This document shows, in pieces, positions 1-28,221 of a stretch of 37,183 nucleotides of DNA (within the stretch, counting starts at the first letter, position 1; every line of letters begins with the position of its first letter). Source of the stretch: Octopus bimaculoides. Its lineage: Eukaryota. A program made the position numbers and the translations under genes. The DNA lies in assembly GCF_001194135.2 (NCBI RefSeq), contig NC_068986.1:80218398-80255580 (forward strand), given 5' to 3'. The notes beneath the pieces are model-generated. The model worked only from the letters and a program-made list of their open reading frames with translations, ran no database searches and was not told where the DNA came from.

Positions 1-1396
1 ACTTTGCTGAAGCTTTGAAGCAAAGTGAAACTGTTGTGTCCTACACAACAAAAGAAATAATAGAAATGAGAAAATTAATCACCAAAGAAAGCGGTGAAAT
101 ACACTTAAACATACCACAACACATAGAGGAAACAAGTAGAAAAACAATAATATATAAAATAATAAACACTAAAAATAGAAAGCCGGAACAGGCCAGTATA
201 GACAAGATTGAACGATGTTTGAAATCAATTTGGAATGAAAAATCATATATTACTTTTTACAAATTTGCACAGGTACAAGTGATTTTTCGAAATGAAGAGT
301 TAGCAAAGAAATATTCAACGCTAACTCTTCACACACCAGAAATAACGATGTTACCTTGGCCAAAAGGTAACAAAGGTAACAATAAAACACGCACCTCCAA
401 CAATAGACACACTATGGTTGACATCGGCCATATGTGTCGATATGGATAACATAAACATACTTAAAATAAACGTTGGAGAAAGCAACTGGACGGGAAAAAA
501 CATACAAATCCAGTTTCACACAAACGAAAAAGAAATCAAAAAAATCCCACCATACATCCGTTTGGCAGGAAACCAAAATTTACATATAGTGGTAGAGGGC
601 AGGTGGCCTCGCTGTTACTTATGTGACAGCGAGGCACACCTCAAAAAGGAGTGTCCGACTGCCCTAAAAACACAACAACAACAAAGACTAACTAAAGCCA
701 TAAAAAAAGCCTTGCTGCCCACACCGCCATCCACTCAAAAAACAACAAAAGCAACATCAACAACATCAACGAAAGGAAACACTACAAAAACTGCAAAATT
801 AACAGACAAAGAAGATGAAAAAAGAAAAGACAATACAAAAATTGATACCCCTTCCCCCATAACCAAAAATTCAACAACCAACAACAACACAACCACTTAC
901 ACAAGCAAACACAGATCCATACAACATGCCCCTACCCACTTCCGATTTCTCAGAGATTTCGTCTGAAGATGAGTTAAGTAATGAGGAATGGAAATTAGCC
1001 CAAAAAGGAAGGGGGAGAGGAGCAAAAAAAGAAGAACAAACAACAACAAAGCAGGGAGATTCACATCTCCCGAAAATACTCCTAACTCGTACACGATAGA
1101 CACCAATAATACCAAAAACAATGCTAACAGCAATAGACACTACAAACACAGAGTTGATGAAATACATCAACTCTAAAACAAACATCACAAATAACGATAT
1201 CAAAACAAACAATCACCCACACACAACACCGCCAAAACACATAAAAATATAACACGTAACACCAGCATTGCACCACAAAATAAAATCCCTCTACCCCAAT
1301 GCGGTAGGGGGATGTCAAAAATATTTATGCAAAAAATTGTATAATAGCCTCCTTGGTGAAAAATCCAAGGAGGAAACAAAACTTTCAAACAAGTAA
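1..1396 (+). pseudogene. Element A ORF1 (RNA-binding, CCHC zinc knuckle), frameshifted
   Basis: ORFs 15-449 and 418-966 contain VVEGRWPRCYLCDSEAHLKKECP; the terminal module ends at TAA 1394-1396. Confidence 0.9.
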
Positions 1397-1446
1397 CTCT
1401 CTGTTCCTTTCTTTTTGTGCTTTAAAGCACATATTTCAATAGAGTC

Positions 1447-4400
1447 ATGCTCAAAATTGGTTGTGTAANNNNNNNNNNNNNNNNNNNNNNNNNNNNNNNN
1501 NNNNNNNNNNNNNNNNNNNNNNNNNNNNNNNNNNNNNNNNNNNNNNNNNNNNNNNNNNNNNNNNNNNNNNNNNNNNNNNNNNNNNNNNNNNNNNNNNNNN
1601 NNNNNNNNNNNNNNNNNNNNNNNNNNNNNNNNNNNNNNNNNNNNNNNNNNNNNNNNNNNNNNNNNNNNNNNNNNNNNNNNNNNNNNNNNNNNNNNNNNNN
1701 NNNNNNNNNNNNNNNNNNNNNNNNNNNNNNNNNNNNNNNNNNNNNNNNNNNNNNNNNNNNNNNNNNNNNNNNNNNNNNNNNNNNNNNNNNNNNNNNNNNN
1801 NNNNNNNNNNNNNNNNNNNNNNNNNNNNNNNNNNNNNNNNNNNNNNNNNNNNNNNNNNNNNNNNNNNNNNNNNNNNNNNNNNNNNNNNNNNNNNNNNNNN
1901 NNNNGAACACCCAAATGTGCCAACGTGGACTTGGAGCAACCGCATTGGGTCGTCGAGATCGTATCTAGATAGGATAGTGTGTAGGACAATAGATAGAAAT
2001 AGCTTAGGATGTCCACAATTCCACACAGTCAGCTACACGGATCACAAACTTGTGACGTGTACGCTAGACTTAAGATAAGGCACATAGGCAGGGTCCCGGT
2101 TACTGGAAACTAAACGTGTCTTTCCCGTCAAGACAGGTTTTCAGAGACCGGATTAGCACGTTAGTAAAGAGGACTTTGACGGAAGCCATCATCAACAACA
2201 AAGGGTGGTTTGCCCTCAATAAAGCAGTAAAAGCAGAAGCAGTTAGATACAGCAAGGCACTAGCCGTAGATAGAAACAAAGTAGAGGGAGAGCTAGTGCA
2301 TAAATTAGAGGAGGCATTAAGAAGCGGCATCGCATCCGACGTTTTGGCGGTGAAATTGGCCCTCGACCAACATTTCAAAGGCCAAACACGAAGGATGTGC
2401 TGTCAGGGCAAGAATGCGTGCTCTAAGGAACGAAGGTGTTGGAGCCGCGCAAGAGGCCCGGGTGGCAGAGGCGCAGCGGGGCAACAGACCCACCATCCGG
2501 TCTCTGGTAGATGAACAGGGGCGCGAATTGCGAGCCGAGCAAGATGTGCAAGGTCTTTCAGCAGCATTTTGCCCGACTGTTCAGGACGAGTGGCGAGCGA
2601 GAACGCAGGGTGGACTTCAGTGCCTACCTGCACAGCCTGCCACGACTCTTGGCAAGAGAGGCGGAGTGCTGCGAAGGTACTGTCACGGCAGCGGAAGTGA
2701 GGGACGCGATGACNNNNNNNNNNNNNNNNNNNNNNNNNNNNNNNNNNNNNNNNNNNNNNNNNNNNNNNNNNNNNNNNNNNNNNNNNNNNNNNNNNNNNNN
2801 NNNNNNNNNNNNNNNNNNNNNNNNNNNNNNNNNNNNNNNNNNNNNNNNNNNNNNNNNNNNNNNNNNNNNNNNNNNNNNNNNNNNNNNNNNNNNNNNNNNN
2901 NNNNNNNNNNNNNNNNNNNNNNNNNNNNNNNNNNNNNNNNNNNNNNNNNNNNNNNNNNNNNNNNNNNNNNNNNNNNNNNNNNNNNNNNNNNNNNNNNNNN
3001 NNNNNNNNNNNNNNNNNNNNNNNNNNNNNNNNNNNNNNNNNNNNNNNNNNNNNNNNNNNNNNNNNNNNNNNNNNNNNNNNNNNNNNNNNNNNNNNNNNNN
3101 NNNNNNNNNNNNNNNNNNNNNNNNNNNNNNNNNNNNNNNNNNNNNNNNNNNNNNNNNNNNNNNNNNNNNNNNNNNNNNNNNNNNNNNNNNNNNNNNNNNN
3201 NNNNNNNNNNNNNNNNNNNNNNNNNNNNNNNNNNNNNNNNNNNNNNNNNNNNNNNNNNNNNNNNNNNNNNNNNNNNNNNNNNNNNNNNNNNNNNNNNNNN
3301 NNNNNNNNNNNNNNNNNNNNNNNNNNNNNNNNNNNNNNNNNNNNNNNNNNNNNNNNNNNNNNNNNNNNNNNNNNNNNNNNNNNNNNNNNNNNNNNNNNNN
3401 NNNNNNNNNNNNNNNNNNNNNNNNNNNNNNNNNNNNNNNNNNNNNNNNNNNNNNNNNNNNNNNNNNNNNNNNNNNNNNNNNNNNNNNNNNNNNNNNNNNN
3501 NNNNNNNNNNNNNNNNNNNNNNNNNNNNNNNNNNNNNNNNNNNNNNNNNNNNNNNNNNNNNNNNNNNNNNNNNNNNNNNNNNNNNNAGAACTGGGGCGAA
3601 ATAATGACTATGGTGGCCACTATCACCCAGTAATGGGCCAAGAGGAAGCTGTCCCTAACAGGTCGGGCGGAGGTGGCAAACATGTACATCACGTCCATCA
3701 TCAACTACCGCCTGACCGTCGTACCTTGTCCCAACCCTACCATCACCAAGCTGGAGTGCATCCTCTTCCACTTGTGGAAGTGAAGCGTTCCGATGGTTAG
3801 GCGATCCATTTGCTGTCAACAGCTGCTAAATGGAGGGCTAGGTATGCCGTAGTTGATGATGCACAGACATGCGCTGAGACTGCGATATCTCCGGCGCTTC
3901 ATCGACAACGGTGAACATATGTGGTCGCTGTTCGTGTGCCACACTTTCCCGCAGCTCGTCTCCTTAACCAAACTGCAGTCGTAGATTAAACAGAGACCTA
4001 GGCTAGGCGAATGGCACAGCGAGTGTCGTGTTGCTCTCAAGCAACTATGCCGTCCGGGACCAAAGTTGTGCAACTTTGATTCCACAAAAGCGTTCTATAG
4101 AGGATTAGTGGAGGGAAGGTGCGACGACGATCTTGGGCAGAATCTGGGCGTCGACAAGGAACACCTGACCTGCCTTTTCAGGACAACTTTCGGGCCGGGA
4201 CCTATGGACAACCACCAAAGAGCCCTGGCCTGGCAGTGCTATCGAGAAGCATTACCCATTTGGGATAAGNNNNNNNNNNNNNNNNNNNNNNNNNNNNNNN
4301 NNNNNNNNNNNNNNNNNNNNNNNNNNNNNNNNNNNNNNNNNNNNNNNNNNNNNNNNNNNNNNNNNNNNNNNNNNNNNNNNNNNNNNNNNNNNNNNNNNNN

Positions 4401-4900
4401 NNNNNNNNNNNNNNNNNNNNNNNNNNNNNNNNNNNNNNNNNNNNNNNNNNNNNNNNNNNNNNNNNNNNNNNNNNNNNNNNNNNNNNNNNNNNNNNNNNNN
4501 NNNNNNNNNNNNNNNNNNNNNNNNNNNNNNNNNNNNNNNNNNNNNNNNNNNNNNNNNNNNNNNNNNNNNNNNNNNNNNNNNNNNNNNNNNNNNNNNNNNN
4601 NNNNNNNNNNNNNNNNNNNNNNNNNNNNNNNNNNNNNNNNNNNNNNNNNNNNNNNNNNNNNNNNNNNNNNNNNNNNNNNNNNNNNNNNNNNNNNNNNNNN
4701 NNNNNNNNNNNNNNNNNNNNNNNNNNNNNNNNNNNNNNNNNNNNNNNNNNNNNNNNNNNNNNNNNNAAAGGAAGGTGAGAATAGAGAGGTAGGTTTTGTC
4801 TCGTGAAAGTTTCAATAAAAGGTGAGTGAATGTAGTAAAGATGGTGCGTGCGAGTGACGATATAGGATTTGAGCATGATCCTTTAAATCGAGAAAAATAA
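1447..4900 (+). pseudogene. Element A ORF2 (APE-RT), disrupted, largely in gaps
   Basis: Starts MLKIGCV; contains SYLDRI/SYTDHK and GPGYWKLN; post-RT LSLTGR-type motif near 3650; C-terminus RKVRIER*VLSRE matches the copy at 27730-27820. Confidence 0.9.
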
Positions 4901-5173
4901 AAAAAAAAGAGAGAGAGAGCACTTTGCACTCCTGTGTCTCTTCCCTACTGAGGTTACCGTGGTCTTTTCTCTCCATGGATAAACCTAATGTTACCCCATT
5001 TTATACTATTGACATTTTCTGTGATATATGATACTTTTTTTTTTTGCCCCTACCGATCCCTTCTGATCAGATTTTTTTATTTTATCTTTTTTATTTTTAA
5101 AGAAAAGCTCTACAGTTGTATTTGTCCCCTCTGTGTGCAGCCTTGTTTGGCTAATAAAAGAAAGAAAGAAAGA
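4901..5173 (+). terminator. Element A 3' UTR with AATAAA (5153-5158) and (GAAA)n tail
   Basis: Shares blocks with the 3' UTR at 27821-28216; AATAAA is followed by an A-rich tail. Confidence 0.8.
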
Positions 5174-8084
5174 TATCTATCTATCTTTATGGACGAATGA
5201 TAGACGTATCAGCTCCGTAAGTTTTGCCTTTTTTATGCTTTCAAAAGTTTGTATTTAAATTGAATTTTGTATAGAAGGTTGTACAACTTATAGACTCTGT
5301 GGTGCAAGTTCATTGCAACGGAGATCTGCCCTGTGTGGCATATTTCCAGATTTTGAAAATTGATTTAGGCTTTCTGGCCATTTTTTGTTTTGGACGATGG
5401 CGTCTTCAAGCCATGAAGATGTTTGTCAAACGAACACTGAATTTTGCAGTGTGTCATTTGACCTTGATTTCCCTACACTTCCTTCCCCACATTTAAACAA
5501 GGGAATGAAGAAAAAGGAAAAAGACATCACACACACAGATGCAGGTGTTGGCATGAAAGTTAACACCGCCACCACCACCACCAACAACAAAAACGAAAAT
5601 GTAACCAAGGTTACAAAAGCATGCCTGAACGACGTCACTAAGGTCTCTGACGTAAATACCATTTCTGCTGACGCCATCATCATCATCACCACTACCACCA
5701 CCAACAAAAACTTTGAGGACATGCCTAAACAAAAAAAAGAAATCCTACATTTTACAAACAAAGAACTCATAGAGACCAGGTCTCTTTTTTCTATGCCTGG
5801 ACAAAATTTAATATTGCATACACCAAAAGAAGTGAGAGAAGACGTAGAAAAAAGAACAATTAGTTATAAAATAATAAGAAAAAGCAATAAAGTTACAGAA
5901 CCAATTACAAAAACAGACACTGAGAAATGTGCAAAAAAAATTATGAAACTTAAACAGTATATAAACTGGGGTCTTCAATATAATACTGTGCAATTTCGGT
6001 TTAATAATGAAGAAGAGGCGAAAATACATAGTATGGAAGCCTTGCAAAATGATGAACTCATCATGGTCCCATACTACATGGGACAGAGAGTGAGTAAAAT
6101 TAAAATAAAAAATGTCCTTCCTGAAATTGAGTCGAAGTGGATTACTTCGGCGATATGTTTTCATTTGAAAACAATCAATGTTTTAGAAACCACTGTTGTC
6201 CATAATGACAATTGAACGGGAAAATCCATTGAAATCTTGATCCAGATGGATCAAGATTCACTGGAAAAATTGCCAAATGTAATTCACCTAGAAAATGGAC
6301 AAAGCTTCTATGTCGTGGCGGAGGGTAAAAAACCGTGTTGCTACCTCTGCGGCAGCCAAGAGCACCTAATATCAAAGTGCGTTTTGGCACAAAAAAAAAG
6401 AAAAAGCAAGAACAGTTACAACCAAAACAAAAAACAAATAAAAAACATTTGCTACCAACACCACCAAACCCACAAGTGATCCGAGAAGTGTATAAAAAAA
6501 TAGAATCCCATCAACAAAGTAAACCAAGAAAAGAAACAACACCACCACAATTAACTCCAACACCGAAACCAATTAGGGATACAACACTACCACCAACATC
6601 AAAAGATAGACCAACACCAATACCAAGAACAACAACGAAGAAAACAAACACCAACGAAGAAAAAACAAATGCTAAACCAAAATCCCCAACAACACACACA
6701 CCACACAACACAACAATGTCTAATAATACAGGCATAGAACCTGATACCTTGCCCTTACCCCCTTCTGATCTGTCGGACTTTTCGTCCAATGATGAAAGTC
6801 CAGTAGAATGGCAAATAGCCACAGAGGGTAAGAGAAAAAGATTAAAAAAGACAAAACCAAACACAAGCAAAGCACGGAGGTACACAACCCCTGAAAGCCC
6901 TTTACACAAACATATGTGAAGATGACTTGAAAACAAACAATCACCAAAGAACAACACCACCAGAACATATAAAAATAGTACATTTGACACCAACACAGCA
7001 CCACACACTCAAATCCCTCTATCCAAATGCAGTAGGGGGTTTCCAAAAATACCTTTCCAAAAAATTGTATAAAGACTTACTCCAAAACACTTCTAAGCAG
7101 GAACAGTGTAAAACTGTCGAAATGAATAAGTAACCTTCTATCTCGTCTCTTTACACTTTTCGACTAAATTATGCTTAAAATAGGTTTGTGTAAATGTACG
7201 TGGCTTGGCGTCAGCTTGGAAGCAAGAATATCTTCTAAATGACATCAGGTCACAGAACATAGAAATAATAGCTATCAGTGAAACCAGACTCAGTAACCCG
7301 CAGGCCCTCAAGTCCATGTTTGGCGGACAATTTGACATTCATTTTTCTCCCTGGAACGCTACCTTGGACACGCATCTAGACTATGTGGGAATGGATAGGA
7401 GTAGAAGGGGATGTAAGTGCCTTAAAGACCTGCTCAGACGTTTCCATTTGTCTGACAGGTTCCGACTCNNNNNNNNNNGGGATGTAAGTGCCTTAAAGAC
7501 CTGCTCAGACGTTTCCATTTGTCTGACAGGTTCCGACTCGACCATCCGAACGTGCCAACGTGGACTTGGACAAACCGCGTTGGATCGTCGAGATCATATC
7601 TAGATAGAATTCTATGTAGGACAGCGGATAGAGATAGTGTAGGATGCCCACAATTTAAAATAGTCAGCTACACGGATCACAAATCTGTGACGTGTACGCT
7701 CAACTTAGATAAGACATATAGGCAGGGTCCTGGTTACTGGAAACTGAATGCTTCGCTCTTAGCACGGCAGGTTTACAGGAACCGGATTAGCGAATTAATT
7801 AAGAGGGCATTAACTGATGGTGGTTTGCCCTGAAAATAGCATTTAAATCTGAATCTATTAGGTTTAGTAAAGAACTAGCGATAGATCGAAATAGAGTATG
7901 AGACTTAGTCAAGAAACTAGAAGAGGCACTTACAACTGGCAGCGCAACCAACGTTTTGGCTGCGAGGATGGCCCTTGACCAACACCTCAACGCCAAACAC
8001 GAAGGTTGCGTCGTCAGAGCTAAAATGCATGCCTTAAGGAACAAAGGGATCGAAACTACGTGAGNNNNNNNNNNNNNNNNNNNN
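5174..8084 (+). mobile_element. Element B: 5' UTR, ORF1 (5397-7133), ORF2 N-terminal part (7171-8084)
   Basis: Starts with (TATC)n and GGACG; ORF1 begins MASSSHED and has CYLCGSQEHLISKC; ORF2 begins MLKIGLCKC with SETR, SYLDR and GPGYWKLN. Confidence 0.9.
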
Positions 8085-8441
8085 NNNNNNNNNNNNNNNN
8101 NNNNNNNNNNNNNNNNNNNNNNNNNNNNNNNNNNNNNNNNNNNNNNNNNNNNNNNNNNNNNNNNNNNNNNNNNNNNNNNNNNNNNNNNNNNNNNNNNNNN
8201 NNNNNNNNNNNNNNNNNNNNNNNNNNNNNNNNNNNNNNNNNNNNNNNNNNNNNNNNNNNNNNNNNNNNNNNNNNNNNNNNNNNNNNNNNNNNNNNNNNNN
8301 NNNNNNNNNNNNNNNNNNNNNNNNNNNNNNNNNNNNNNNNNNNNNNNNNNNNNNNNNNNNNNNNNNNNNNNNNNNNNNNNNNNNNNNNNNNNNNNNNNNN
8401 NNNNNNNNNNNNNNNNNNNNNNNNNNNNNNNNNNNNNNNNN

Positions 8442-16200: not shown

Positions 16201-16501
16201 AAGACTCTCAGCAAGAGAGGCTGAGTGCTGCGAAGGTGCCATCACGGCGGCGGAAGTGGGGGACGTGATGGCAGGATGCTTGAGGGACAAATCTCCGGGT
16301 TTGGATGGTCTGCTCTACGAGCCTTACAATTGTATGCCAGACAGGTTTGGAGACATCCTGGTGGTGGTGTACTGCAACTGGCAGCAGAACGGGAGCATTC
16401 CAGGTTTTGTGAGCTAGGGAACCGTAACGCTGCTGAAGAAAGATCCAAACAAGGGGGATGTCATAGATAACTTTAGGCCCATCACTCTGCTCAATGCAGA
16501 C
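13273..16501 (+). mobile_element. Segment E: chimeric ORF1 (13273-14929), ORF2 (14980-16501)
   Basis: ORF 13765-14766 with CYLCGIEMHLKKNCP; ORF2 begins MVKIGCVNVRGLG and has KSPGLDG and FRPITLLNAD. Confidence 0.9.
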
Positions 16502-16924
16502 NNNNNNNNNNNNNNNNNNNNNNNNNNNNNNNNNNNNNNNNNNNNNNNNNNNNNNNNNNNNNNNNNNNNNNNNNNNNNNNNNNNNNNNNNNNNNNNNNNN
16601 NNNNNNNNNNNNNNNNNNNNNNNNNNNNNNNNNNNNNNNNNNNNNNNNNNNNNNNNNNNNNNNNNNNNNNNNNNNNNNNNNNNNNNNNNNNNNNNNNNNN
16701 NNNNNNNNNNNNNNNNNNNNNNNNNNNNNNNNNNNNNNNNNNNNNNNNNNNNNNNNNNNNNNNNNNNNNNNNNNNNNNNNNNNNNNNNNNNNNNNNNNNN
16801 NNNNNNNNNNNNNNNNNNNNNNNNNNNNNNNNNNNNNNNNNNNNNNNNNNNNNNNNNNNNNNNNNNNNNNNNNNNNNNNNNNNNNNNNNNNNNNNNNNNN
16901 NNNNNNNNNNNNNNNNNNNNNNNN

Positions 16925-18072: not shown

Positions 18073-19978
18073 ACTTTGTGGCGTATTTCCCATTTTTGTA
18101 AAATTAATTTCGACTTTCTTAGCCATTTTTGTTTTGAGAATGGCGACTCCAAGCCATGAGGATGAACCTATGACGAACGCCGGTCTGTTTGGCCACTCGT
18201 TTGACATTAATTTCCCTAGACTGCCTTCATCACAACTTCACGAAGGAGGGAACAAAGGGAGAAGTAGCACACAAACAGGTGCCAATGTTAGCATGAACGC
18301 TAACACCGCCACCAACAACAACAGCGATATCATCTCAAAGGCTATTACCTTAAAGACAAACACCAGCACCACTACCACAGCTTCACCATCAACTGCTACA
18401 ACGGACACCTACACCACCACCACAGCCTCACCGTCAGCTGCTACAACGGACGCCCTTGCCACCACTACCAACACCACCACCATCACAAATTTCGCAGAAG
18501 CATTGAAACAAAGAAAAACACTTCTACATTTCACACCAGAATAAATCAAAGAAACCAAAGTCCTCTGAACAGAAAAGGGCTCAGGTCTACACCTAAACAT
18601 TCCGCAAAACATTATAGAGGCCACATGAAAGAGAATAATATACAAAATCCTAAATGCAAAAACATGCAGACCAGAACAAGCACCCCAAGAACTCATTGAA
18701 AAATGTTTACGCCCGATATGGATTTTCCAAAAATATGTAACCTGGTGGAATAAATATGCTACAATCCAGGTTTGCTTCAACAGTGAAGAAAAAGCCAAAG
18801 AGCTGTCGACACTCACACTACAGTCGGAGAAACTAATCCTAATTCCGACCTACCTTGGTCAACGTGTGACCAAAGTTTCAATCAAGAATGTCCCTCCTGA
18901 GATTGAGTCACAATGGCTTTTGTCAGCCATTTGTTACCGCATGGAGGACTTCAACATCCTCGAGTATGCTACTTCGCAGGAAGAGAACTGGTCCGGAAAA
19001 AGGATTCAAGTATTGCTACAAATAAATGAGAACCAAATAAACAGCATTCCACACCATTTTGATCTGCCAGACGGCCATAAGCTCTATGTAGTGGTAGAAG
19101 GCCTCTCTGTTACCTGCGTGGCAGCGAAGAGCACCGCCGAACTGACTGCCCAACAGCAAAGAAAAATCAACAAAAACAAGAGCAAGAACAACTACCACAA
19201 CAAGGAAAAACTACAAGGAAAAAAGAACCCTTACTACCCACACCACCATCAACACAGAGAACAAGCAAAGAGAGTAAAACAAAACAAACACACCAGCCAA
19301 CACCAACCGCTTACACAAACAAACACAGATCCATACGACATGCCCCTACCCCCTTCCGATAACTCAGAACTTTCGTCGGAAGACGAAAGTAGTGAGGAAT
19401 GGCAAATAGCCAGGAAAGGAAGAAGGAAAAGGGGGAAAAAAAGAACAAACACAAACACCAACAAAGCAGGGAGATTCACAACTCCCGAAAACACTTCCAA
19501 CTCTAACACAAACACCACCAATAATAACTACCAAAACAATGCTCACAGCAATAAACACAAAAAACACAGAGTTGATGAAATGCATCAACTCCAAAACAAA
19601 CATCACACAAAACGACATTAAAACAAATACACAACACCACTAGAACATCAAAATTTACCATATCTCACTAACATTGCACCACATACTAAAATCCCTCTAC
19701 CACAATGTGGTGGGGGTGGGGTCAAAAATATCTGTGTAAAAATTTGTACAGCAGCCTCCTTGGTGAAAAGTCAAAGGAAGAAACCGAACTTTCGAACAGT
19801 AAGTAACTGTTCATTTCGTTTGTGTTTTAAAGCACACAACTCAATAGGATCATGGTCAAGATTGGTTGTGTGAACGCGCATGGCTTGGGGTCCCCTTGGA
19901 AACAAAGGTACCTCTTAAATGGCATAAAGTCACATAATTTGGGAATCATAGCCGTAAGTGAGACCAGACTCTATGATA
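18073..19978 (+). mobile_element. Segment G: distal 5' UTR, ORF1 (18140-19806), start of ORF2 (19852-19978)
   Basis: ORF1 begins MATPSHEDE and includes SSEDESSEEWQIARKGRRKR; ORF2 begins MVKIGCVN and has VSETRL. Confidence 0.9.
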
Positions 19979-20640
19979 CCCAAAAACAAATCAATGATAC
20001 AAAATCCCTTCTCACGAAAGAAGGTGACACCGTACAAATACACATACCAAAAGAAATCATCGAAAACACAAACAAAAAGCACATATGATACAGACTTATC
20101 ATCACGAAAACCAAGCGACCGGAGAATTTCTCCACCAAAAAAATAGAAATTTGTCTCAAACTTATATGGCCCTTTCAAAACCATGTTACTTGGGGGTGCA
20201 GGTTCGTCATCATTCAAGTACGCTTTCAGAGCGAAGAGTTAGCAAAGAAATTTTCGACACTCTCTCTCCACACAGATGACTTGGTGATGATACCGAGATA
20301 TCTTGAACAGAGAGTGATGAAGGTGACAATAAAAAATGTGCCTTTAGATGTAGAGATGCAATGGATAGTATCTGCCATATGCCTCGAAATGGAGGAGGCA
20401 AACATACTGGAAATTGCTGCTGTAGAGGAAAAAAACTGGGAAAGGAAAAAACTCGAAGTCCTCCTCCACATCACTGAAGAGGAATCCAAAAAAATTCCCA
20501 GATATATCAAACTGGCAGAGGACCACAAGTTGTATGTAGTGGTGGTAGAAAGGCAGCTACACTGTTATATATGCAACAGCGAGGTACACCTCAAAAAGAA
20601 TTGCCCAACTGCTGTGAACCAAAAACAACAGCAAGACCAC
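19979..20640 (+). mobile_element. Segment H: ORF1 central fragment
   Basis: KSLLTKEGDTVQIHIP through CYICNSEVHLKKNCP. Confidence 0.85.
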
Positions 20641-20699
20641 GATCACCAAACGAATTGCTGAAATATGCCTGAACTCTGAGAATAATTATGAAAAAAATT

Positions 20700-22887
20700 T
20701 CGTGCTACTTCTTAATTCACGTGAAGGTAAGATGGGTACAGAAGAAACAGATCACCCAACTGCCACAACAGCAGCCCCTACCAGCATCACAACTGCCAAC
20801 AACAATGCTAATACAGCAACAACTGTCACCTCTGCCATCAACACCAACACCACCACCAACAACAAGATAAAAACAAACTTTGCCGAGGTGATAAGGCAAA
20901 AAACGACAATAGTATCTTTCACTTCATAGCAGATGAAAGATACAAAGGCTCTACTTACCAAAGAAAATGATGAGGTACAGATCAACATACCACAAGACAT
21001 ATTAGAAGATACCAACAAAAAGACAATTATTTATAAAATTTTAAACTCCAAAATCAAAAAACCAGAAAAAGCAAGCACGTAAAAGATCGAGAAATGCTTG
21101 AGATCTGTATGGCCATATAAAGATTATGTAACTTGGTGGCATAAATTTGCCCATGTGCAAGTTATTTTTCAAAATGAAGAGTTAGCGAAACGATTCTCAA
21201 CGCTAACTCTTAAGACAGAAGACATAATAATGATACCGAGTTACATTGGTCAGAGGGTAACAAAGGTTATCATAAAATATATTCCTCCCATGGTAGACAC
21301 ACAATGGATAACATCAGTCATGTGTGTTGACATGGAGGAGGTCGACATATTACAAATTGCTGTTTCTGAACAGCAACATTGGGTGAGTAAAAAAATGGAG
21401 ATCCTTCTTCATATTACCCAGGAGTCATTAAACAAAATACCCACCTACATACAGTTATCACCAGAGCAAAAGCTGTATGCAGTGGTGGAGGGCAGACGAC
21501 CACGCTATTACATATGCAGCAGTGAAGCTCACTTTCAAAAGGATTGTAATTCTGCTGCAAAACAATATGTAACCCCTGAAAGTCCCTTGCACAACCAAAC
21601 CAGCACCAACATCACAAAAACACACACAATGCTATCAGCGATAGACACAAAAAACACAAGACTAATGGACTACATCATATCTCACACAAACATTTCTGAA
21701 GATGATTATAAGCTTAACAATCATACATGCACTACACCACCGAAACACATCAAAATAGTTCACATCACACAAATGCAGNNNNNNNNNNTAAACAAAATAC
21801 CCACCTACATACAGTTATCACCAGAGCAAAAGCTGTATGCAGTGGTGGAGGGCAGACGACCACGCTATTACATATGCAGCAGTGAAGCTCACTTTCAAAA
21901 GGATTGTAATTCTGCTGCAAAACAATATGTAACCCCTGAAAGTCCCTTGCACAACCAAACCAGCACCAACATCACAAAAACACACACAATGCTATCAGCG
22001 ATAGACACAAAAAACACAAGACTAATGGACTACATCATATCTCACACAAACATTTCTGAAGATGATNNNNNNNNNNNNNNNNNNNNNNNNNNNNNNNNNN
22101 NNNNNNNNNNNNNNNNNNNNNNNNNNNNNNNNNNNNNNNNNNNNNNNNNNNNNNNNNNNNNNNNNNNNNNNNNNNNNNNNNNNNNNNNNNNNNNNNNNNN
22201 NNNNNNNNNNNNNNNNNNNNNNNNNNNNNNNNNNNNNNNNNNNNNNNNNNNNNNNNNNNNNNNNNNNNNNNNNNNNNNNNNNNNNNNNNNNNNNNNNNNN
22301 NNNNNNNNNNNNNNNNNNNNNNNTTAGACGTCTAGAGGTTTTCCTGGGAACATCTCGGACTTTACTGCTAGTAGGGGACTGGAACGCTACCTTGGAGACG
22401 CATCTAGACTATGTGCGAATGGATAGGAGTAGAAGGGGATGTTAGTGCCTCAAAGACCTGCTCAGACATTTCCATTTGTCTGACAGGTTCCGACTCGACC
22501 ATCCGAACGTGCCAACGTGGACTTGGACAAACCGCGTCGAATCGTCGAGATCGTATCTAGATAGAGTTCTATGTAGGACAGCGGATAGAGATAGTGTAGG
22601 ATGTCCACAATTTAAAATAGTCAGCTACACTGGTCATAAATTTGTGACATGTACACTCGCTTAAATAAGACACATAAGCAGGGTCCCGGTTACTGGAAAC
22701 TAAATGTTTCACTCTTAGCACGGCAGGTTTACAGAAACCGGATTCTTGAGTTAATTAAGAGGGCGTTAACAGGAGCCATCGTTAACAACCACTGGTGGTT
22801 TGCCCTAAAAATGGCAATTAAATCAGAATCTATTAGGTTTAGTAAAGAATTAGCGATAGAGCGAAATAGAGTAGAGAGAGACTTAGT
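20700..22887 (+). mobile_element. Segment I: ORF1 (about 20717-22066) and ORF2 APE part (22324-22887)
   Basis: Thr-rich N-terminus, NFAEVIRQK, IPSYIGQRV; GDWNATL, SYLDRV, GPGYWKLN. Confidence 0.88.
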
Positions 22888-22990
22888 TATCATCATGGAC
22901 GGACGGTAGACACATCGGCTCCGTAAGTTTTACCTTTTTTGCTTTTAAAAAGTTTGTTTCTCAGTCATACTTTATATACAAAACTTGATT
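22888..22990 (+). mobile_element. Segment J: isolated LINE 5' UTR start
   Basis: TATCATC-ATGGACGGACGG...GCTCCGTAAGTTTT aligns with 5174-5260 and 24633-24720. Confidence 0.75.
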
Positions 22991-23209
22991 GATTCTCAAA
23001 AATACGACTTGGAAAAACGTTGCATTCCTGATTAAATAAATATAATACAGTTATTTTTTGTTATTGTTTGTACATAGATACAGATATAGGCACCATCAAC
23101 ATATTTATGGATATCAGTCAACCTGTTACTTTCTTTCTTTCTTTCTTTGTGTATGTATATAAACAAAATACAATATACGACAAACTTCTTTGTTACAGAG
23201 ACACCACTC

Positions 23210-23302
23210 TAAATCTGCAAAAATCAGTTTTTAACCGCTTTTGAGAATTACTTATACTTAAACTCGGTTTTTGGAATTATCGGTTTTTTTTTGTGAGCCC
23301 TA
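23210..23302 (-). mobile_element. Possible single terminus of a hAT-like DNA transposon
   Basis: Minus strand reads TAGGGCTCAC followed by AAAACCG subterminal motifs; no second end found. Confidence 0.35.
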
Positions 23303-23538
23303 GTAAGTAACCTTCTCTCTCGTCTCTACTGTTTCGACAAAATTATGCTTAAATCAGGTTTGTGTAAATGTACGTGTCTTGGCATCAGCTTGGAAACAAG
23401 GTTATCTTCTAAGTGACATCAAGTCACAGAACGTAAAAATCATAGCAATCAGTGAAACCAGACTCAGTAATGCACGGGCCCTCGCATCCATGTTTGGTGG
23501 ACAATTCGACATTTATTTTTCTTCCTTTCTGCCAAACA
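23303..23538 (+). mobile_element. LINE fragment: ORF1 stop, spacer and APE start (ATG 23345)
   Basis: Closely similar to 7128-7350; MLKSGLCKC...ISETRL...FSSFLPN. Confidence 0.85.
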
Positions 23539-23590
23539 TCTATCTATGTGTTGTTGCATTGGTTCTTAAGGTAATCGCTTTTTTCTACCG

Positions 23591-23955
23591 TTCATTGAAT
23601 AAGTTTTGTTTACATTTTCACACACGAGGTGTGTAAGGCACCCAGCTTTTGTCTGGGTGTGTTTCCAAGGGGGAATTTGCCCCTAGGAGCAATTTCAGCC
23701 CTATTTTAATATCTAATTTGCCTTCTCGAGTTTTATAAATGTCACGAAATTTATCTGTCGTCTGACGTTATCGTGTCATCTGTGTAACTTTTCATTGAAC
23801 AAGCTTTGTTTACATTATTGCATTCAAGGTGTGTGAAGCACCCAGCTTTTGTTTGGGTATTTTTAAGGGTGGAATTGGCCCCTAGGAGCAGTTTCAGCAC
23901 TACTTTAATATCCAATCTTCTTTCTCGAGTTTAAAAATGTCGAGAAATTTGATTG
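23591..23955 (+). repeat. Two diverged direct repeats, period 200 bp
   Basis: TTCATTGAA...GTTTACATT...GCACCCAGCTTTTGT...CCCTAGGAGCA...CTCGAGTTT occurs at 23591 and 23791. Confidence 0.9.
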
Positions 23956-24620
23956 TGAAGCACTGGTCGGCATCCTTCATGAATGAACATTTTCCTAGCC
24001 TGGGAATGATGGAAGAAAAAAAGAATGAATCTTTCACACACACACACACACTCCAAAACAAGCACAGTTACACCAACAAATGTAAAAGATGGAAAATAAA
24101 TTGCTGTCAATACCATGAATACTAATTCCATGATCAATAAAAGCCCTGTCATCACCACCACCACCACCAAAACTACCACATCTACCATTGCCACCACCAC
24201 AACAACCATTAACAACAACATTATCGCTACAACTGTGCCTGCTGATTCCCAGAAATTGAATATCTTACCTATTACTGGTGAAGATATTAATACTAGTAAT
24301 AAGAATACACCATCCACTGTTTCTACTAGTGCCACTACAAACATTACCACCAACAAAAAGAGCACTATGGTTACTAAACCAAATGCCCCAAGCAATGCCA
24401 CTACACCATCAGCTAACACTATTGACACCAATTTTTTCACATGGATTTAAATGAAATTTGAACCATAGGTAAATGAATAGAAACTATGCCTGTTCCCAAA
24501 ATATCAGCAAATTTCAATAATATTAAGACACCCTAATAGGGGCTAAATCCCTTTATATTGCAAATGTTGGAAGTTTATAACTTGAGTTTTTGAACTTCTA
24601 TTATCATGGGATCTTTCTAT

Positions 24621-24632
24621 TAATTAAGCGTA
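24621..24632 (+). repeat. Left target-site duplication of element K (TAATTAAGCGTA)
   Basis: Identical 12-mer at 28222-28233; 14/15 match if extended to 24618 and 28219. Confidence 0.85.
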
Positions 24633-27600
24633 TCTATCTATCTCTGATCCGGACGGATAATAGTCGCATCTGCTCGCAAGTAAGTTGGCTTTTTATATGA
24701 CAAAAATTTTGCAGTTTTGAAATATTTTTTGTGGAAGAGGTGTATAAGACTATACACTTCGATCCTATTGGGTTTCTGTAATAGGAAGTGGCTCCTTTTG
24801 GAGTTTATTTCCAAAAGTTTTAATTTTTTTTCTCCAGCTTATTTGCCATATTTCGTAAAATAAATATGGCTAGGCCTTTACACATGGTCAATTTGCCTCT
24901 AATATCAGGCAAGGAGACTGACAAACAAGTCGTTGCACATAAACAAACACAAGACATAGAGACCAGGAATGCTTCTGCTTCTACTACTAATGCCTTCACC
25001 ACCCCCACTACCACCATCACATCCAAAAACTCTACTGCTAGAGAAGTCCACCACCAGTGACAACAACAACAACAGGACACTGGCCGTCAACACCGACACC
25101 ACCACTACTTCAACAAACTCTGCTGCCACTACCACCACCTTTGAACCTAGCAGTACCAACACCACCATCAACAACTATAACAAGATGAACAAGATAAACA
25201 ACACCACAACCACCACAAAAATAAATTTTGCCGATGCAACTAAAGAAAAAAGAACAATAATAACATTCACCCCAAAACAAATTAAAGATACAAAATCCCT
25301 TCTCACGAAAGAAGGTGACACCGTACAAATACACATTCCAAAAGAAATCATCGAAAATACAAACAAGAAGTACAAAGAATACAGACTTATCAAAAAGAAA
25401 ACCAAGCGACCGGAGAATTTCACCACCAAAATGATTGAAATCTGTCTTAAACCTATATGGCCCTTTCAAAACCATGTTACTTGGGGCTGCAAGTTCGCCA
25501 CGGTCCAAGTACGCTTTCAGAGTGAAGAAATTTTCGACACTCTTTCTCCACACAGATGACTTGGTGATGATACCGAGTTATCTTGGACAGAGAGTGATGA
25601 AGGTGAGAGTAAAGAATGTCCCTTCACAAGTGGAGACACAGTGGATAATAGCTGCCATATGCCTCGAAATGGAGGAGGCAAATATATTAGAAATTGCTGC
25701 TGCAGAGGAGAAAAACTGGGAAGGGGGGAAAAAACTCGAAGTCCTCCTCCACATCACTGAAGAGGAGTCCCAAAAGATCCCCACACACATCCAACTGGCA
25801 AAAGACCACAACTTGTATGTAGTGGTGGAAGGAAGGCGGCCACGCTGTTATGTATGTGGAAGCGAGGCACACCTCAAGGACAGTTGCCCAACCACCGCCA
25901 ACCAAAAAAAGCAACAAGGACAACTACCAAAACCCACGAAAAAAACCCTACTACCAACACCAGCATCAACACTCAAAACAAGAGAAATACCAGCAATATC
26001 AACTCAGAAGACAACAGCAACTGCAAGAACAAGTGAGGAAACAGGAGAAAAAAAAAAAGAAAATTCCAAAACTGTCTCCCCCTCCCCCATATCACATACA
26101 CCTCACACAAATAACAAGCAGCCAACACCAACAAAAACAGCAACACACACAGCGCTCACAAGCAACAAAACCCCAAAAGTAAACACACAATGCTCACTGC
26201 CATCAACACAAAAAACTCAGAGTTGATGGAATACATCAACACAAAAACAAACATAACAAACGAAGACATAAAAACCAGCAACCACCCATACACAACACCG
26301 CCAGAACACATCAAAATACTACACATAACACCAACCCTGCACCACACACTAAAATCTATTTTTCCAAAGGCAGTTGGCAAATGCCAAAAATACCTGGCGN
26401 NNNNNNNNNNNNNNNNNNNNNNNNNNNNNNNNNNNNNNNNNNNNNNNNNNNNNNNNNNNNNNNNNNNNNNNNNNNNNNNNNNNNNNNNNNNNNNNNNNNN
26501 NNNNNNNNNNNNNNNNNNACGACAAAGTCACACAAACTAGAAATCATAGCCATAAGCGAGACCAGACTCCATGATCCGCGGGCCCTAACGTCCATGTTTG
26601 GCAGACAGTTTAACATTTATTTTTCTCCCTGTCTGCCGAGAATGGGTGGTAGTGGCACGACGGTACTCTTTCGCAAGAGTCTGGATCTCGAAGTAAAGAC
26701 AGTATTCATAGACCCGGAGGGTAGATTGGTTGTTCTGGATGTCGATGGCAGCGATGGGTGTGCTTTTCGACTCATATCAGTCTACGCACCACCTTTAACA
26801 GGGGACTGGAATGCTACCTTGGACACGCATCTAGACTATGTGGGCAGAGATAGGAATAGACGAGGATGAAAATGCCTCAAAGACCTGCTCAGACGCTTTC
26901 AACTGTCTGACAGGTACCGACTCGACCACCTGAATGCGCCAATGTGAACATGGAGCAACGGCATCAGGTCGTCAAGATCGTATCTAGTCAGCTACACGGA
27001 TCACAAACTTGTGGCTTGTACGCTAGACTTAGATAAGACACATAGGCAGGGCCCCGGTTACCGGAAACTAAATGTGTCTTTCCTGACGAAACAGGTTTTC
27101 AGAGACCGGATTAGCACGTTAGTAAAGAGGGCTTTGACGGGAGCCATCATCAATAACAAATGGTGATTTGCCCTTAAGAGAGCAATAAAAGCAGAAGCAG
27201 TTAGGTATAGCAAAGCACTAGCTGTAGATAGAAACAGAATAGAGGGCGAGCTAGAAGAGGCAATTAGAAGTGGCATCGCATCCAACGTTTTGGTGGCGAG
27301 GTTGGCCCTAGACCAACGCTTCAACGCAAAACACNNNNNNNNNNNNNNNNNNNNNNNNNNNNNNNNNNNNNNNNNNNNNNNNNNNNNNNNNNNNNNNNNN
27401 NNNNNNNNNNAAAATGTGTGAGGCCTTTCAGCGGCACTTTGCTTGACTGTTTGGGACGAGTGGCGAGCGAGAAGGCAGGGTGGACTTCAGTGCCTACCTG
27501 CACAGCCTGCCACGACTCTCGGCAAGAGAGGCGGAGTGCTGCGAAGGTGCCATCACGGCGGCAGAAGTGAGGGACGCAATGGCGGGATGCTCGAGGGACA

Positions 27601-28221
27601 AATCTCCGGGATTGGATGGTTTGCCCTACAAGCTTTACAACTGTATGCCAGACTTGTTTGGAGACGTCTTGGTGGTGGTGTACTGCAACTGGCAGCAGAA
27701 TGGGAGCATTCCCGGTTTTGTGAGCCAAGGAAGGTGAGAATAGAAACGGAAGTTTTGTCTAGTGAATGCTTCAAAAAAAGATGGGTGAATGTAGCAAGAA
27801 TGGCACGTGTGAATGACTGATCCACCTTGAACATAACCCTATAAAGGAGTAAAAAAAATCCAGGAAAAAAAACAAAGAGGCAAAAGAGAGTTACTTGCTG
27901 TTATAGTCTCTTCAATAACAATGACAATATTGACCAAGGTTACCGTGGTCTTTTTCATAGGCTTTTCTTTCCACAGCTAAACCTAAACTGTCCTCCCCTT
28001 TTTTTACATGAGAACATTACTGTGATACACAATCCCTATTGATCATTTTTTTTTTTTCTCTCTTGATCCCTTTTGATTGAACTCCCCCCTTTTTTCTTTC
28101 CTATGATCCCTTTTGATTGACACCCCCACTCTTCTTCCTTTTTCTCTTTCCTTCCCCCTCCCAAAAAGAAAAGCTCTACATTGTATTTGTCCCATCTGTG
28201 TGGCTAATAAAAGAAATGTAG
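24633..28221 (+). mobile_element. Element K: TSD-flanked, internally deleted LINE with both termini; ORF1 24866 to about 26399, ORF2 26519-27820
   Basis: (TCTA)n 5' end, GTAAGT, ORF1 knuckle CYVCGSEAHLKDSCP, APE and early RT, C-terminus RKVRIETEVLS...ARVND*, AATAAA at 28206-28211. Confidence 0.92.

What the first reader, a model, noticed from the sequence alone, without database searches (positions are those of the whole stretch)
1..28221. 28-kb strictly unidirectional array of multi-subfamily Tx1-like LINEs: candidate piRNA cluster or self-attracting insertion locus
At least 11 segments from clearly divergent subfamilies all lie on +, including the independently inserted, TSD-flanked element K. 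The Helitron and hAT relics are also +. Random orientation of about 11 independent events is very unlikely, although some segments may be duplicates. Strand-biased TE graveyards such as Drosophila flamenco produce antisense piRNAs; self-targeting L1-clade elements (Zepp) also build oriented arrays. Which mechanism applies here is inference.
Basis: partly seen in the sequence, partly recalled or inferred. Interest (0 to 1): 0.82.

Follow-up and report, generated by a model that had tools for sequence, protein, structure and literature searches.

The report
One-way pile-up of truncated LINE fragments
About 19 pieces of L1/Tx1-type jumping genes from at least seven lineages all point the same way, but most lack their tail ends and are spliced directly onto each other, so they are not independent insertions and a piRNA-cluster role is untested.

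Summary
In window 1-28221 every detectable LINE piece is on the + strand, while the single inverted self-match lies outside the array, at 35.2-35.9 kb (95 direct self-matches in the whole window). All 25 ORF2 and all ORF1 protein matches are +, and minus-strand ORFs have no Pfam domain. ORF1 copies belong to at least 7 old lineages (synonymous sites saturated, pN/pS about 0.15-0.4). They are therefore not local duplicates of one or two insertions.

The independence assumption fails. Only element K (24632-28221, 12-bp TSD) and the direct A-tail to B-head joint (5165/5166) look like ordinary retrotransposition. There are two 3' tails in the whole array. The other ~15 pieces are 3'-truncated. They are joined internal-to-internal, or internal-to-5'-end, inside gap-free sequence with 0-6 nt of microhomology. 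Coverage falls from 5' to 3': ORF1 core about 11x, RT 2-3x, tail 2x. This is the reverse of a normal LINE profile.

My best reading is orientation-coupled, RNA/cDNA-mediated LINE-on-LINE joining at a repeatedly broken site (inferred). Zepp- or telomere-type arrays are not met. A flamenco-type piRNA cluster cannot be tested here, and its content feature (LTR/Gypsy enrichment) is not met. The draft assembly keeps a partial scaffold artefact possible: 13 gaps in the array (14 in the window), unmerged overlaps, one redundant contig.

The parts
1..5165 (+). Element A. ORF1 is cut by the window start. Then EN end and linker (1905-2713), RT C-terminal part (3587-4269), and the 3' tail (4767-5165) ending GGCTAATAAAAG(AAAG)2A. 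Three internal N gaps.
   Evidence: Gap sizes 436 and 873 match the missing element lengths of 405 and 937.
5166..8490 (+). Element B. The full 5' end (TATCTATCTATCT TTATGGACGAATGATAGACG) directly abuts A's tail. 5'UTR, complete ORF1 (5397-7006), EN and linker up to composite position c3326.
   Evidence: The 10-N gap at 7469 has a perfect 61-nt overlap.
8497..9080 (+). Piece B' (ORF1 end to ORF2 start, c1699-2280). 94.7% identical to C 11373-11944. It sits between B's linker and an RT piece. Left joint: 6-nt microhomology CCAGAC. Right joint: AAA filler.
9084..9898 (+). Piece B'' (RT and RT C-terminal part, c3837-4653).
9899..12366 (+). Piece C. ORF1 from about aa 114 (c~454), then a gap, ORF1 end and EN start, a gap, and EN up to c2451.
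12373..13272 (+). Piece C'' (RT, c3434-4335; RVT_1 E=3e-17). Joined to C with the whole linker missing.
13272..13560 (+). Piece X1. ORF1 core fragment (c790-1070), 81% identical to A 319-599. Left joint microhomology CGC.
13563..16501 (+). Piece D. ORF1 from about aa 152-164 through EN and linker to the RT start (c570-3505). It runs into gap 16502-16924.
16925..17712 (+). Pieces S6a (16925-17204, 96% to E), S6b (17201-17650, 96% to F) and a 65-nt EN/linker snippet (17648-17712, 94% to D). The S6a|S6b joint has microhomology TCAA and stays in frame.
17704..18075 (+). Piece S7. ORF1 core fragment (c640-1000), of the F lineage (85% to F, 91% to S6b).
18076..19975 (+). Piece E. It starts 153 nt into the 5'UTR and carries ORF1 (18140-19618) to the ORF2 start (c2117).
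19978..20638 (+). Piece F. ORF1 aa ~126-353 (c490-1170), 85% identical to K.
20640..22887 (+). Piece G. ORF1 from about aa 38, a redundant contig and a gap, then EN and linker to c2859 (87% to B).
22888..23535 (+). Piece J. A full 5' end (TATCATCATGGACGG..., 70 nt) abuts G. Then 346 nt unassigned, then ORF2-start piece JEN (23304-23535, c2008-2190, 86% to B).
23538..24440 (+). Piece H. 5' end with a TATC repeat, two tandem 5'UTR monomers (23591-23752 and 23791-23950), and the ORF1 N-terminal low-complexity region up to the NF motif (c~455).
   Evidence: Assignment rests on motif and composition, so it is weaker than the others.
24620..24631 (.). Left copy of K's target-site duplication, TAATTAAGCGTA.
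24632..28221 (+). Element K. 5' end, ORF1, EN, linker, an internal deletion from the RT start to the tail at 27732, and the 3' tail ending GGCTAATAAAAGAAATGTAG. Two N gaps.
28222..28233 (.). Right copy of K's target-site duplication, TAATTAAGCGTA.

Best explanation
The array is a real LINE-on-LINE pile-up, not a row of independent insertions. A few ordinary target-primed insertions are present: A, B attached head-to-tail to A's tail, and K with its TSD. The rest consists of 5'-proximal LINE segments that never had, or immediately lost, their 3' ends.

Proposed mechanism (inferred). Breaks or nicks in a resident + oriented LINE expose its antisense strand. Sense RNA of related LINE lineages anneals there by homology or microhomology. 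It is reverse-transcribed toward its 5' end, either to the true 5' end or to a stall near the low-complexity borders of ORF1. The cDNA is then sealed to the other break end by microhomology-mediated joining. A neighbouring variant is new tail-primed insertions whose 5' joining resects the predecessor's 3' part.

Because the primer is the resident element's antisense strand, every added piece must have the resident orientation. Repetition stacks 5' pieces from whichever lineages were expressed.

Shown: orientation, piece map, joints, lineage divergence. Inferred: the RNA/cDNA step and the recurrent break.
For: (1) All pieces are +.

(2) Only two 3' tails (4767-5165 and 27727-28217) against four true 5' ends (5178, 22888, 23538, 24632) and 11 ORF1 cores.

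(3) Coverage declines 5' to 3' along the element: ORF1 core about 11x, linker about 5x, RT 2-3x, tail 2x. This is the opposite of a 5'-truncation profile. Random deletion of ordinary insertions would not produce it.

(4) The ten joints resolved at base level inside gap-free sequence carry 0-6 nt of microhomology or a short filler: TCAA, CCAGAC, CGC, GA, CT, AAA. A k-mer mis-join would need much longer overlaps.

(5) No poly(A) signal or A-tail at piece ends: 1 of 16 against a 6.5% background. No returning halves that nesting would require.

(6) The pieces come from at least 7 ORF1 lineages that diverged under selection. The sources were therefore different expressed elements, not local copies.

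(7) The near-register joint S6a|S6b (c840 to c755, E-like to F-like) fits homology-guided annealing.

(8) Within single elements, ORF1 is anciently diverged while ORF2 is recent: pS 0.6-0.84 against 0.11-0.28. 5'-module exchange therefore happens in this family.

(9) Literature. Endonuclease-independent L1 insertions are 3'-truncated, lack TSD and poly(A), and show microhomology at both ends (PMC1920257).
Against: There is no read-level or experimental evidence for an RNA step.

The rightmost piece (H) ends at c455 next to non-LINE DNA. The expected final colinear run to a 3' end is absent, so one extra deletion or an interrupting insertion must be assumed.

Four forward jumps also need extra deletions or out-of-register priming: B' to B'', C to C'', S6b to the 65-nt snippet, and J to JEN. 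This makes the model flexible.

Human non-classical L1 insertions are biased to the 3' half (PMC1920257), unlike here.

A recurrent break at one locus is postulated, not shown.

The draft assembly could have concatenated several real but separate loci.

Three relatives examined in another genome are ordinary solitary elements.
Confidence: 0.4

Rival explanations
1. Ordinary TPRT insertions into or next to resident copies, followed by many microhomology-mediated deletions. Orientation would be biased by the A-rich sense strand or by homing to the (AAAG)n tail.
For: The A-to-B joint is a clean tail-to-head junction and K is a classical insertion. TAAAA:TTTTA is 75:22 in the array, so an L1-like nick preference would favour same-sense insertion about 3:1. 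Microhomology deletions inactivating LINEs are documented (PMC2861651). Tail-to-head or tail-to-internal tandems from consecutive insertion are documented (PMC5932611).
Against: It needs at least 12 deletions, each of which happened to remove a 3' tail while sparing 11 ORF1 cores and 4 exact 5' ends. Only 1 of about 16 joints keeps a tail. A 3:1 bias gives about 0.16 for 8 events and about 0.01 for 19 events all in the same sense. K's one TSD shows no A-run or microsatellite target. Deletions ending exactly at an element's first base (G-to-J, JEN-to-H) would be coincidences.
Confidence: 0.2
2. Assembly artefact. The scaffold chains contigs from dispersed LINE copies. Links inside a repeat family always preserve element orientation, so the 'array' is largely a construct.
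For: There are 13 gaps in 28 kb. Two 10-N gaps have unmerged perfect overlaps, and there is one fully redundant contig. Nearly all gaps sit between colinear element coordinates. Repeat-guided scaffolding would produce exactly this. Close pairs at 94-96% identity could be allelic or paralogous contigs placed in series.
Against: Most non-colinear joints lie inside gap-free sequence. Four contigs (8442-10678, 12139-15659, 16925-21778, 22324-26399) each contain 3-7 pieces, all on +. Their joints have only 0-6 nt of overlap, too short for graph mis-joins. K has a perfect 12-bp TSD and unique flanks. Identity profiles across A's gap resemble those seen in the contiguous D and K.
Confidence: 0.2
3. 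A flamenco-like unistrand piRNA cluster. Selection kept only insertions in one orientation relative to a long precursor transcript, and fragments were trimmed over time. This does not exclude the mechanisms above.
For: Uniform orientation of fragmentary, inactive TE pieces from several lineages. The left border lies outside the window, so the locus may be larger.
Against: Only one LINE group is present. Described flam-like clusters are 227-1085 kb, enriched in Gypsy/LTR elements, and defined by a promoter and one-strand piRNAs (PMC10643416). Selection on orientation does not explain the missing 3' ends, the 5' bias or the direct piece-to-piece joints. The right flank has a minus-strand mariner relic. 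No small-RNA or expression data are available.
Confidence: 0.12
4. One or two giant retrotransposition events in which the reverse transcriptase jumped serially between LINE RNAs. This would give a concatemer of sense pieces.
For: Same-sense pieces, microhomology or filler at joints, and a tail-to-head joint (A-to-B) of the kind that end-to-end template jumping produces. ORF1/ORF2 modular exchange suggests template switching in this family.
Against: It would need about 15 jumps and more than 17 kb of cDNA. Known chimeras have 1-2 jumps (my own knowledge). No 3' tail or TSD closes the mosaic on its right side. Piece ends are not RNA 3' ends.
Confidence: 0.08

Closest known systems
Endonuclease-independent ('non-classical') L1 insertions at DNA breaks, and L1 chimeras formed when new cDNA joins a resident L1 (Sen et al. 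2007, PMC1920257; Gilbert 2002 and Symer 2002 from my own knowledge)
   Same: The pieces are 3'-truncated and lack poly(A) and TSDs. They have short microhomology at both ends. The same orientation is required when cDNA pairs with a resident element.
   Different: Here about 15 such pieces are stacked at one locus, from many lineages, and they are biased to the 5' third of the element. Human cases are single events and mostly involve the 3' half.
Head-to-tail LINE arrays: Drosophila HeT-A/TART/TAHRE telomeres, Chlorella Zepp clusters, Giardia GilM/GilT, and consecutive-insertion tandems (PMC5932611)
   Same: One orientation, LINE-only, several insertions at one place. The A-to-B joint is of this type.
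   Different: Those arrays keep every unit's 3' end and vary at the 5' end (tail-to-internal joints). Here 3' ends are missing and 5' parts are kept, with 0 tail-to-internal joints.
flamenco-type unistrand piRNA clusters (PMC10643416)
   Same: A strand-coherent graveyard of inactive TE fragments.
   Different: Single LINE group instead of diverse Gypsy/LTR elements. Only 28 kb in view against hundreds of kb. Promoter, transcript and piRNAs are unknown. The direct fragment-to-fragment joints are not a known feature of those clusters.
Microhomology-associated deletions in LINEs (Hebe in Adineta vaga, PMC2861651)
   Same: Intact 5' ends, with internal and 3' losses joined at short microhomologies.
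   Different: Hebe copies are dispersed single elements with 12-200 bp deletions. They are not multi-lineage stacks.
L1/Tx1-group LINEs (Tx1L, Keno, Kibi and Koshi; human L1 ORF2p structures 8C8J and 8SXT)
   Same: ORF1 with an RRM-like core plus one CCHC knuckle. ORF2 with an AP-type endonuclease and an RT closest to human L1 ORF2p (E=1e-17 against 7e-8 for R2).
   Different: No specific repeat, snRNA or rDNA target of the kind used by site-specific Tx1-clade members. Clade placement by phylogeny was not done.

Membership tests
L1/Tx1-group non-LTR retrotransposon | ORF2 with AP-type endonuclease followed by reverse transcriptase | tested here: met
   RVT_1 at E=3e-17 on 12244-12870. EN, linker and RT tblastn hits to relative L001, whose gene products carry Exo_endo_phos and RVT_1. 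The best solved relative is human L1 ORF2p.
L1/Tx1-group non-LTR retrotransposon | ORF1 with RRM-type core plus CCHC zinc knuckle | tested here: inconclusive
   zf-CCHC scored 19.8 bits at E=8e-4, just under the 20.8-bit cut-off. The CX2CX4HX4C motif is visible in D, A, F, K and C. An RRM was not detected by Pfam.
Tx1 clade specifically | RT phylogeny grouping with Tx1L, Keno, Kibi and the like rather than L1 proper | not tested
Tx1 clade, site-specific members | Insertion into a specific repeated target (snRNA, 5S, microsatellite, Tx1D) | tested here: not met
   K's TSD TAATTAAGCGTA lies in non-repetitive AT-rich DNA. No Rfam family in the window. No target tandem repeat.
Zepp / telomeric HTT-type head-to-tail array | Each unit keeps its 3' end or poly(A) and is joined to a variably 5'-truncated neighbour (tail-to-head or tail-to-internal joints) | tested here: not met
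   Two tails in 28 kb. One tail-to-head joint (A-to-B), no tail-to-internal joints, and about 15 internal-to-internal or internal-to-head joints.
Zepp / telomeric HTT-type head-to-tail array | All units in one orientation | tested here: met
flamenco-type unistrand piRNA cluster | Strong strand bias of TE fragments | tested here: met
   All LINE pieces are +. The direction relative to transcription is unknown.
flamenco-type unistrand piRNA cluster | Large locus (hundreds of kb) enriched in LTR/Gypsy elements | tested here: not met
   28 kb in view, with the left edge open. Only one LINE group in the array. Criteria taken from PMC10643416.
flamenco-type unistrand piRNA cluster | Discrete promoter, long single-strand precursor, 24-32 nt 1U piRNAs from one strand | not testable with these tools
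   No expression or small-RNA data. The species is not identified.
Endonuclease-independent (non-classical) LINE insertion | 3' truncation, no poly(A), no TSD, microhomology at the junctions | tested here: met
   Piece ends lack a tail, A-run and poly(A) signal. Microhomology is 0-6 nt. TSD absence can only be judged from the lack of repeated flanks. Criteria from PMC1920257.
Endonuclease-independent (non-classical) LINE insertion | Demonstrated pre-insertion (empty) site | not testable with these tools
   No other individuals or species are available.
Nested ('Russian doll') LINE-in-LINE insertions | The interrupted host element resumes after the guest's 3' end, with a TSD | tested here: not met
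   No resuming halves anywhere to the right. No LINE homology beyond 28221.

The most novel reading that the evidence does not exclude
A LINE family whose RNA or cDNA is repeatedly captured in register by resident copies, through break repair or serial template jumping. This would build strand-locked, ORF1-rich, tail-less stacks of many lineages. The same process would explain the observed swapping of ancient ORF1 modules onto young ORF2 backbones. Such a stack could also act as a ready-made single-strand source of small RNAs against ORF1 and the 5' regions.
Probability: 0.15. Interest if true: 0.7.

Novelty: new variant of a known kind. Interest (0 to 1): 0.42.

Why it matters
If the joints are real, this locus records a route by which LINE sequence enters DNA without the usual tail-primed insertion, and in a forced orientation. 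It would link three things that are usually studied apart: break repair with retroelement cDNA, recombination between LINE lineages (new ORF1 modules on old ORF2 backbones), and the origin of strand-coherent TE graveyards that can become piRNA sources.

There is also a practical lesson. Uniform orientation of neighbouring LINE fragments cannot be scored as a run of independent coin flips. If the locus turns out to be a scaffold construct, it is a useful warning case for repeat-guided scaffolding.

Tried and rejected
1. NESTED INSERTION. No resuming host halves and no LINE homology right of 28221. Rejected.

2. PREMATURELY POLYADENYLATED RNAs AS THE SOURCE OF 5' PIECES. Only 1 of 16 piece ends has AATAAA or ATTAAA within 45 nt, against a 6.5% background, and there are no A-tails. 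Rejected.

3. LOCAL DUPLICATION OF ONE OR TWO INSERTIONS. ORF1 synonymous sites are saturated with pN/pS well below 1. Rejected for the main lineages. It stays possible for B', S6a, S6b and S7, where pN is about equal to pS.

4. SPLICING AS THE CAUSE OF K'S AND C'S INTERNAL DELETIONS. The joints lack GT...AG borders. Rejected.

5. AGE GRADIENT ALONG THE ARRAY. Frame interruptions run at 1.5-3.5 per kb with no clear trend. Uninformative.

6. CHIMERISM ACROSS A'S FIRST GAP. The jump in identity to D (70-80% before the gap, 91-93% after) is mirrored in the contiguous D and K comparisons. No evidence for chimerism.

7. SPECIES IDENTIFICATION. The best RT hit is 73% (an unnamed ENA contig), a named cuttlefish hit is 58%, and ORF1 has only two unnamed hits. 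Failed. No second locus of the same genome could be examined.

8. RELATIVES IN ANOTHER ASSEMBLY (L001, L003, L004). Solitary colinear elements, no arrays.

9. STRUCTURED RNA OR TARGET GENES. Rfam found nothing. Tandem Repeats Finder found only short low-complexity arrays.

10. PFAM ON THE HELITRON-LIKE AND hAT-LIKE ORFs. Silent. Only a weak Helraiser match in the PDB at E=0.08.

Full report
WHAT THE WINDOW IS

The window is a eukaryotic draft scaffold: 40.7% GC, CpG observed/expected 0.58, and 14 N runs. The + strand is A-rich (11428 A against 7882 T). AT skew is positive across the claimed array except for one slightly negative bin at 22.5-24 kb. Rfam finds no RNA family.

THE GAPS

- The 10-N gaps at 7469-7478 and 15660-15669 are flanked by perfect overlaps of 61 and 50 nt, so the sequence is continuous there.
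- The contig 21789-22066 is a 100% redundant copy of 21429-21706 placed after a 10-N gap. This is an assembly artefact.
- I built a composite element from the window's own pieces and used its coordinates ('c'). On that scale, every other array gap except one lies between colinear positions with roughly the expected missing length. Examples: c2015 to c2420 = 405 nt against 436 N, and c3274 to c4211 = 937 nt against 873 N.
- The single exception is 16502-16924, which separates c3505 from c558.
- Colinearity across gaps is also what repeat-guided scaffolding would give. It therefore does not prove that both flanks come from one genomic copy.
- Frame continuity across N runs has no meaning, because the lengths are estimates.

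CHECK OF THE OBSERVATION

- Self-comparison gave 95 direct HSPs and one inverted HSP. The inverted one lies at 35.2-35.9 kb, outside the array.
- A related, nearly complete LINE was fetched from an ENA contig (L001; ORF1, Exo_endo_phos, RVT_1) and used as a protein probe. All 25 hits were on +.
- Three ORF1 proteins from the window hit only the + strand.
- Minus-strand ORFs of 50 aa or more, covering about 1-25 kb, contain no Pfam domain.
About 19 colinear pieces can be delimited (listed under 'parts').
It spans 24632-28221, has a 5' end and a 3' tail, and is flanked by TAATTAAGCGTA on both sides.
- The Helitron-like relic (28584-29103) and the hAT-like relic (30161-30543) are on +. They lie outside the stated span and are weakly supported. 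Pfam is silent. The only PDB match at E<10 for the first is the Helraiser transposase, at E=0.08.
- A mariner-like HTH relic is on the minus strand at 35496-35771.

ARE THE PIECES DIVERGENT SUBFAMILIES?

In the ORF1 core, pairs among A, B, C, D, E, F and G have pS of 0.57-0.94 (saturated) and pN of 0.26-0.42. They separated long ago as functional lineages. The 'one or two insertions plus local duplication' refutation does not apply to them.

Four pieces are close, neutrally diverged copies of neighbours:
- B' to C: 94.7%, pN 0.021 and pS 0.025.
- S6a to E: 96%.
- S6b to F: 96%.
- S6b to S7: 91%.

The number of independent ORF1 lineages is therefore about 7-8.

ORF2 is much less diverse. A, D and K share EN and linker at 85-93% (pS 0.11-0.28). 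B and G share them at 87% (pS 0.19). The 5' module has evidently been exchanged between lineages.

All pieces are inactive, with 1.5-3.5 frame interruptions per kb and no clear gradient along the array.

ANATOMY OF THE ELEMENT

- The 5' end is a short TATC repeat followed by TGGACGRAYGRTAGAC...GCTCCGTAAGTTTT.
- The 3' tail is about 450 nt and ends GGCTAATAAAAGAAAG.
- True 5' ends occur at 5178 (B), 22888 (J), 23538 (H) and 24632 (K).
- Tails occur only at 4767-5165 (A) and 27727-28217 (K).
- The RT is closest to human L1 ORF2p among solved structures: E=1e-17, against 7e-8 for R2.
- ORF1 has an RRM-like core and one CCHC knuckle. The Pfam zf-CCHC match falls just under its cut-off.
- 'L1/Tx1-group' is therefore supported. 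'Tx1 clade' was not tested. The site-specific habit of some Tx1-clade members is not seen.

THE KEY FINDING: THE JOINTS

- A's tail runs directly into B's 5' end with no intervening DNA (5165/5166). This is a tail-to-head joint of the kind produced by consecutive insertion or end-to-end template jumping (PMC5932611).
- Every other joint between 5178 and 24440 is internal-to-internal, or internal to a 5' end.
- The element coordinate traces a sawtooth:
  B 5'-to-c3326 | B' c1699-2280 | B'' c3837-4653 | C c454-2451 | C'' c3434-4335 | X1 c790-1070 | D c570-3505 | gap | S6a c558-840 | S6b c755-1190 | c2500-2562 | S7 c640-1000 | E c51-2117 | F c490-1170 | G c230-2859 | J 5' end | JEN c2008-2190 | H 5'-to-c455.
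- None of these pieces has a tail, an A-run or a nearby poly(A) signal: 1 of 16 against a 6.5% background.
- None is followed later by the resuming half of an interrupted host. Simple nesting is therefore excluded.
- All but one of these joints (D to S6a, hidden in gap 16502-16924) lie inside gap-free sequence. The ten I aligned base by base carry 0-6 nt of microhomology or a short filler: TCAA, CCAGAC, CGC, GA, CT, AAA. The rest are placed only to within a few bases. This is typical of end joining or template switching, and far too short for k-mer mis-joins.
- Four separate contigs each hold 3-7 pieces, all on +.
- Coverage along the element falls from 5' to 3': ORF1 core about 11 copies, linker about 5, RT 2-3, tail 2. 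A normal LINE population, which is 5'-truncated, shows the reverse.
- Piece starts cluster at c450-640 and several ends at c1000-1190. These are the low-complexity borders of the ORF1 core.

INTERPRETATION

Random deletion of ordinary insertions would not selectively remove about 13 tails while sparing 11 ORF1 cores and four exact 5' ends.

I therefore favour an orientation-coupled process in which LINE RNA or cDNA is joined onto resident LINE DNA. The antisense strand exposed at a break or nick in a resident copy pairs with sense RNA of related lineages and primes reverse transcription toward the RNA's 5' end. The product is then sealed by microhomology joining. Four things follow from this directly:
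- same orientation
- no tail and no TSD
- true or stalled 5' ends
- a 5'-rich stack from many lineages

It resembles endonuclease-independent L1 insertion (PMC1920257) and L1 chimera formation (my own knowledge). It fits the near-register S6a|S6b joint and the family's ORF1/ORF2 modularity.

Weak points:
- There is no closing run to a 3' end on the right.
- There are four forward jumps.
- A recurrent break has to be assumed.

Confidence is 0.4. The RNA step is inference.

RIVALS

- Biased ordinary insertion plus deletions (0.2). TAAAA:TTTTA is 75:22 in the array, so an L1-like nick preference would give about 3:1 same-sense insertions. This helps but is not sufficient.
- Scaffold artefact (0.2). 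Supported by the poor assembly, opposed by the gap-free short-microhomology joints and by K's TSD.
- Unistrand piRNA cluster (0.12, not exclusive). Strand coherence fits. However, described flam-like clusters are 227-1085 kb, Gypsy-rich, and defined by a promoter and one-strand piRNAs (PMC10643416). None of that can be tested here, and selection on orientation does not explain the missing 3' ends.
- A single serial template-jump concatemer (0.08).

COMPARISON WITH KNOWN SYSTEMS

Zepp and telomeric HTT arrays share orientation and LINE-only content, but they keep 3' ends. That defining feature was tested here and is not met.

Three relatives in another genome are ordinary solitary elements.

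The species could not be identified.

VERDICT

- Observation: confirmed.
- What is there: a strand-locked stack of mostly tail-less, 5'-biased LINE pieces from several old lineages.
- Novelty: a new variant of known LINE-at-break and LINE-array phenomena, provided read data confirm the joints.
- Interest: moderate (0.42), limited by the draft assembly and the lack of reads, small RNAs or a second locus.

Noticed in passing
A 1-2713, D 13563-16501, K 24969-27730, B 5397-8064, G 20640-22887: ORF1 and ORF2 of the same elements have very different divergence. ORF1 is 63-70% identical at nucleotide level with pS 0.6-0.84. EN and linker are 85-93% identical with pS 0.11-0.28. This implies exchange of the 5' module (5'UTR and ORF1) between lineages.
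   Followed up: partly
23591-23752 and 23791-23950: Two tandem ~160-nt 5'UTR monomers (83% identical), each ending in an ATG, lie upstream of H's ORF1 N-terminus. This recalls the monomeric promoters of mouse L1.
   Followed up: no
12366-12373 and 27727-27732: Two unrelated joints fall within about 10 nt of the same element position at the linker/RT boundary: C to C'', and K's internal deletion. This may be a breakage or switching hotspot.
   Followed up: partly
16971-17423: A 151-aa ORF reads in frame across the S6a|S6b joint. This duplicates about 28 aa of the ORF1 core.
   Followed up: no
7408-7539, 15610-15719, 21429-22066: The assembly contains unmerged perfect overlaps (61 and 50 nt) at two 10-N gaps. 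It also has a fully redundant 278-nt contig at a third.
   Followed up: yes
28584-29103 (+): A decayed Helitron-like N-terminal region (HCxCGA...GKV...LREYNS...SF motif). The only PDB match at E<10 is the Helraiser transposase, at E=0.08. Pfam is silent. K is inserted about 350 bp upstream of it.
   Followed up: partly
30161-30543 (+): ORFs with a TTF-type zinc-finger-like motif (W..RPRLEYS...CFIC...NW...H..S.SH), typical of hAT/ZMYM-like transposase N-termini. I recognised this from memory only. Pfam is silent.
   Followed up: no
35242-35906: A mariner-like HTH_48 relic (minus-strand ORF 35496-35771, E=0.007) sits inside an inverted duplication (35242-35457 against 35691-35906). This is the only inverted repeat in the window.
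   Followed up: partly
36767-37100: A tandem repeat of about 146 nt (77% identity between copies) lies at the right end of the window.
   Followed up: no
22958-23303 and 24441-24631: Two unassigned stretches lie inside or at the edge of the array. The first contains (CTTT)4 at 23129-23148. The second is the DNA into which K inserted.
   Followed up: no
L001, L003, L004 (ENA ERZ21867824 contigs): Relatives of this LINE (about 50-57% RT identity) in another long-contig assembly are solitary colinear ORF1-EN-RT elements lying next to LTR retrotransposons. They do not form arrays.
   Followed up: partly
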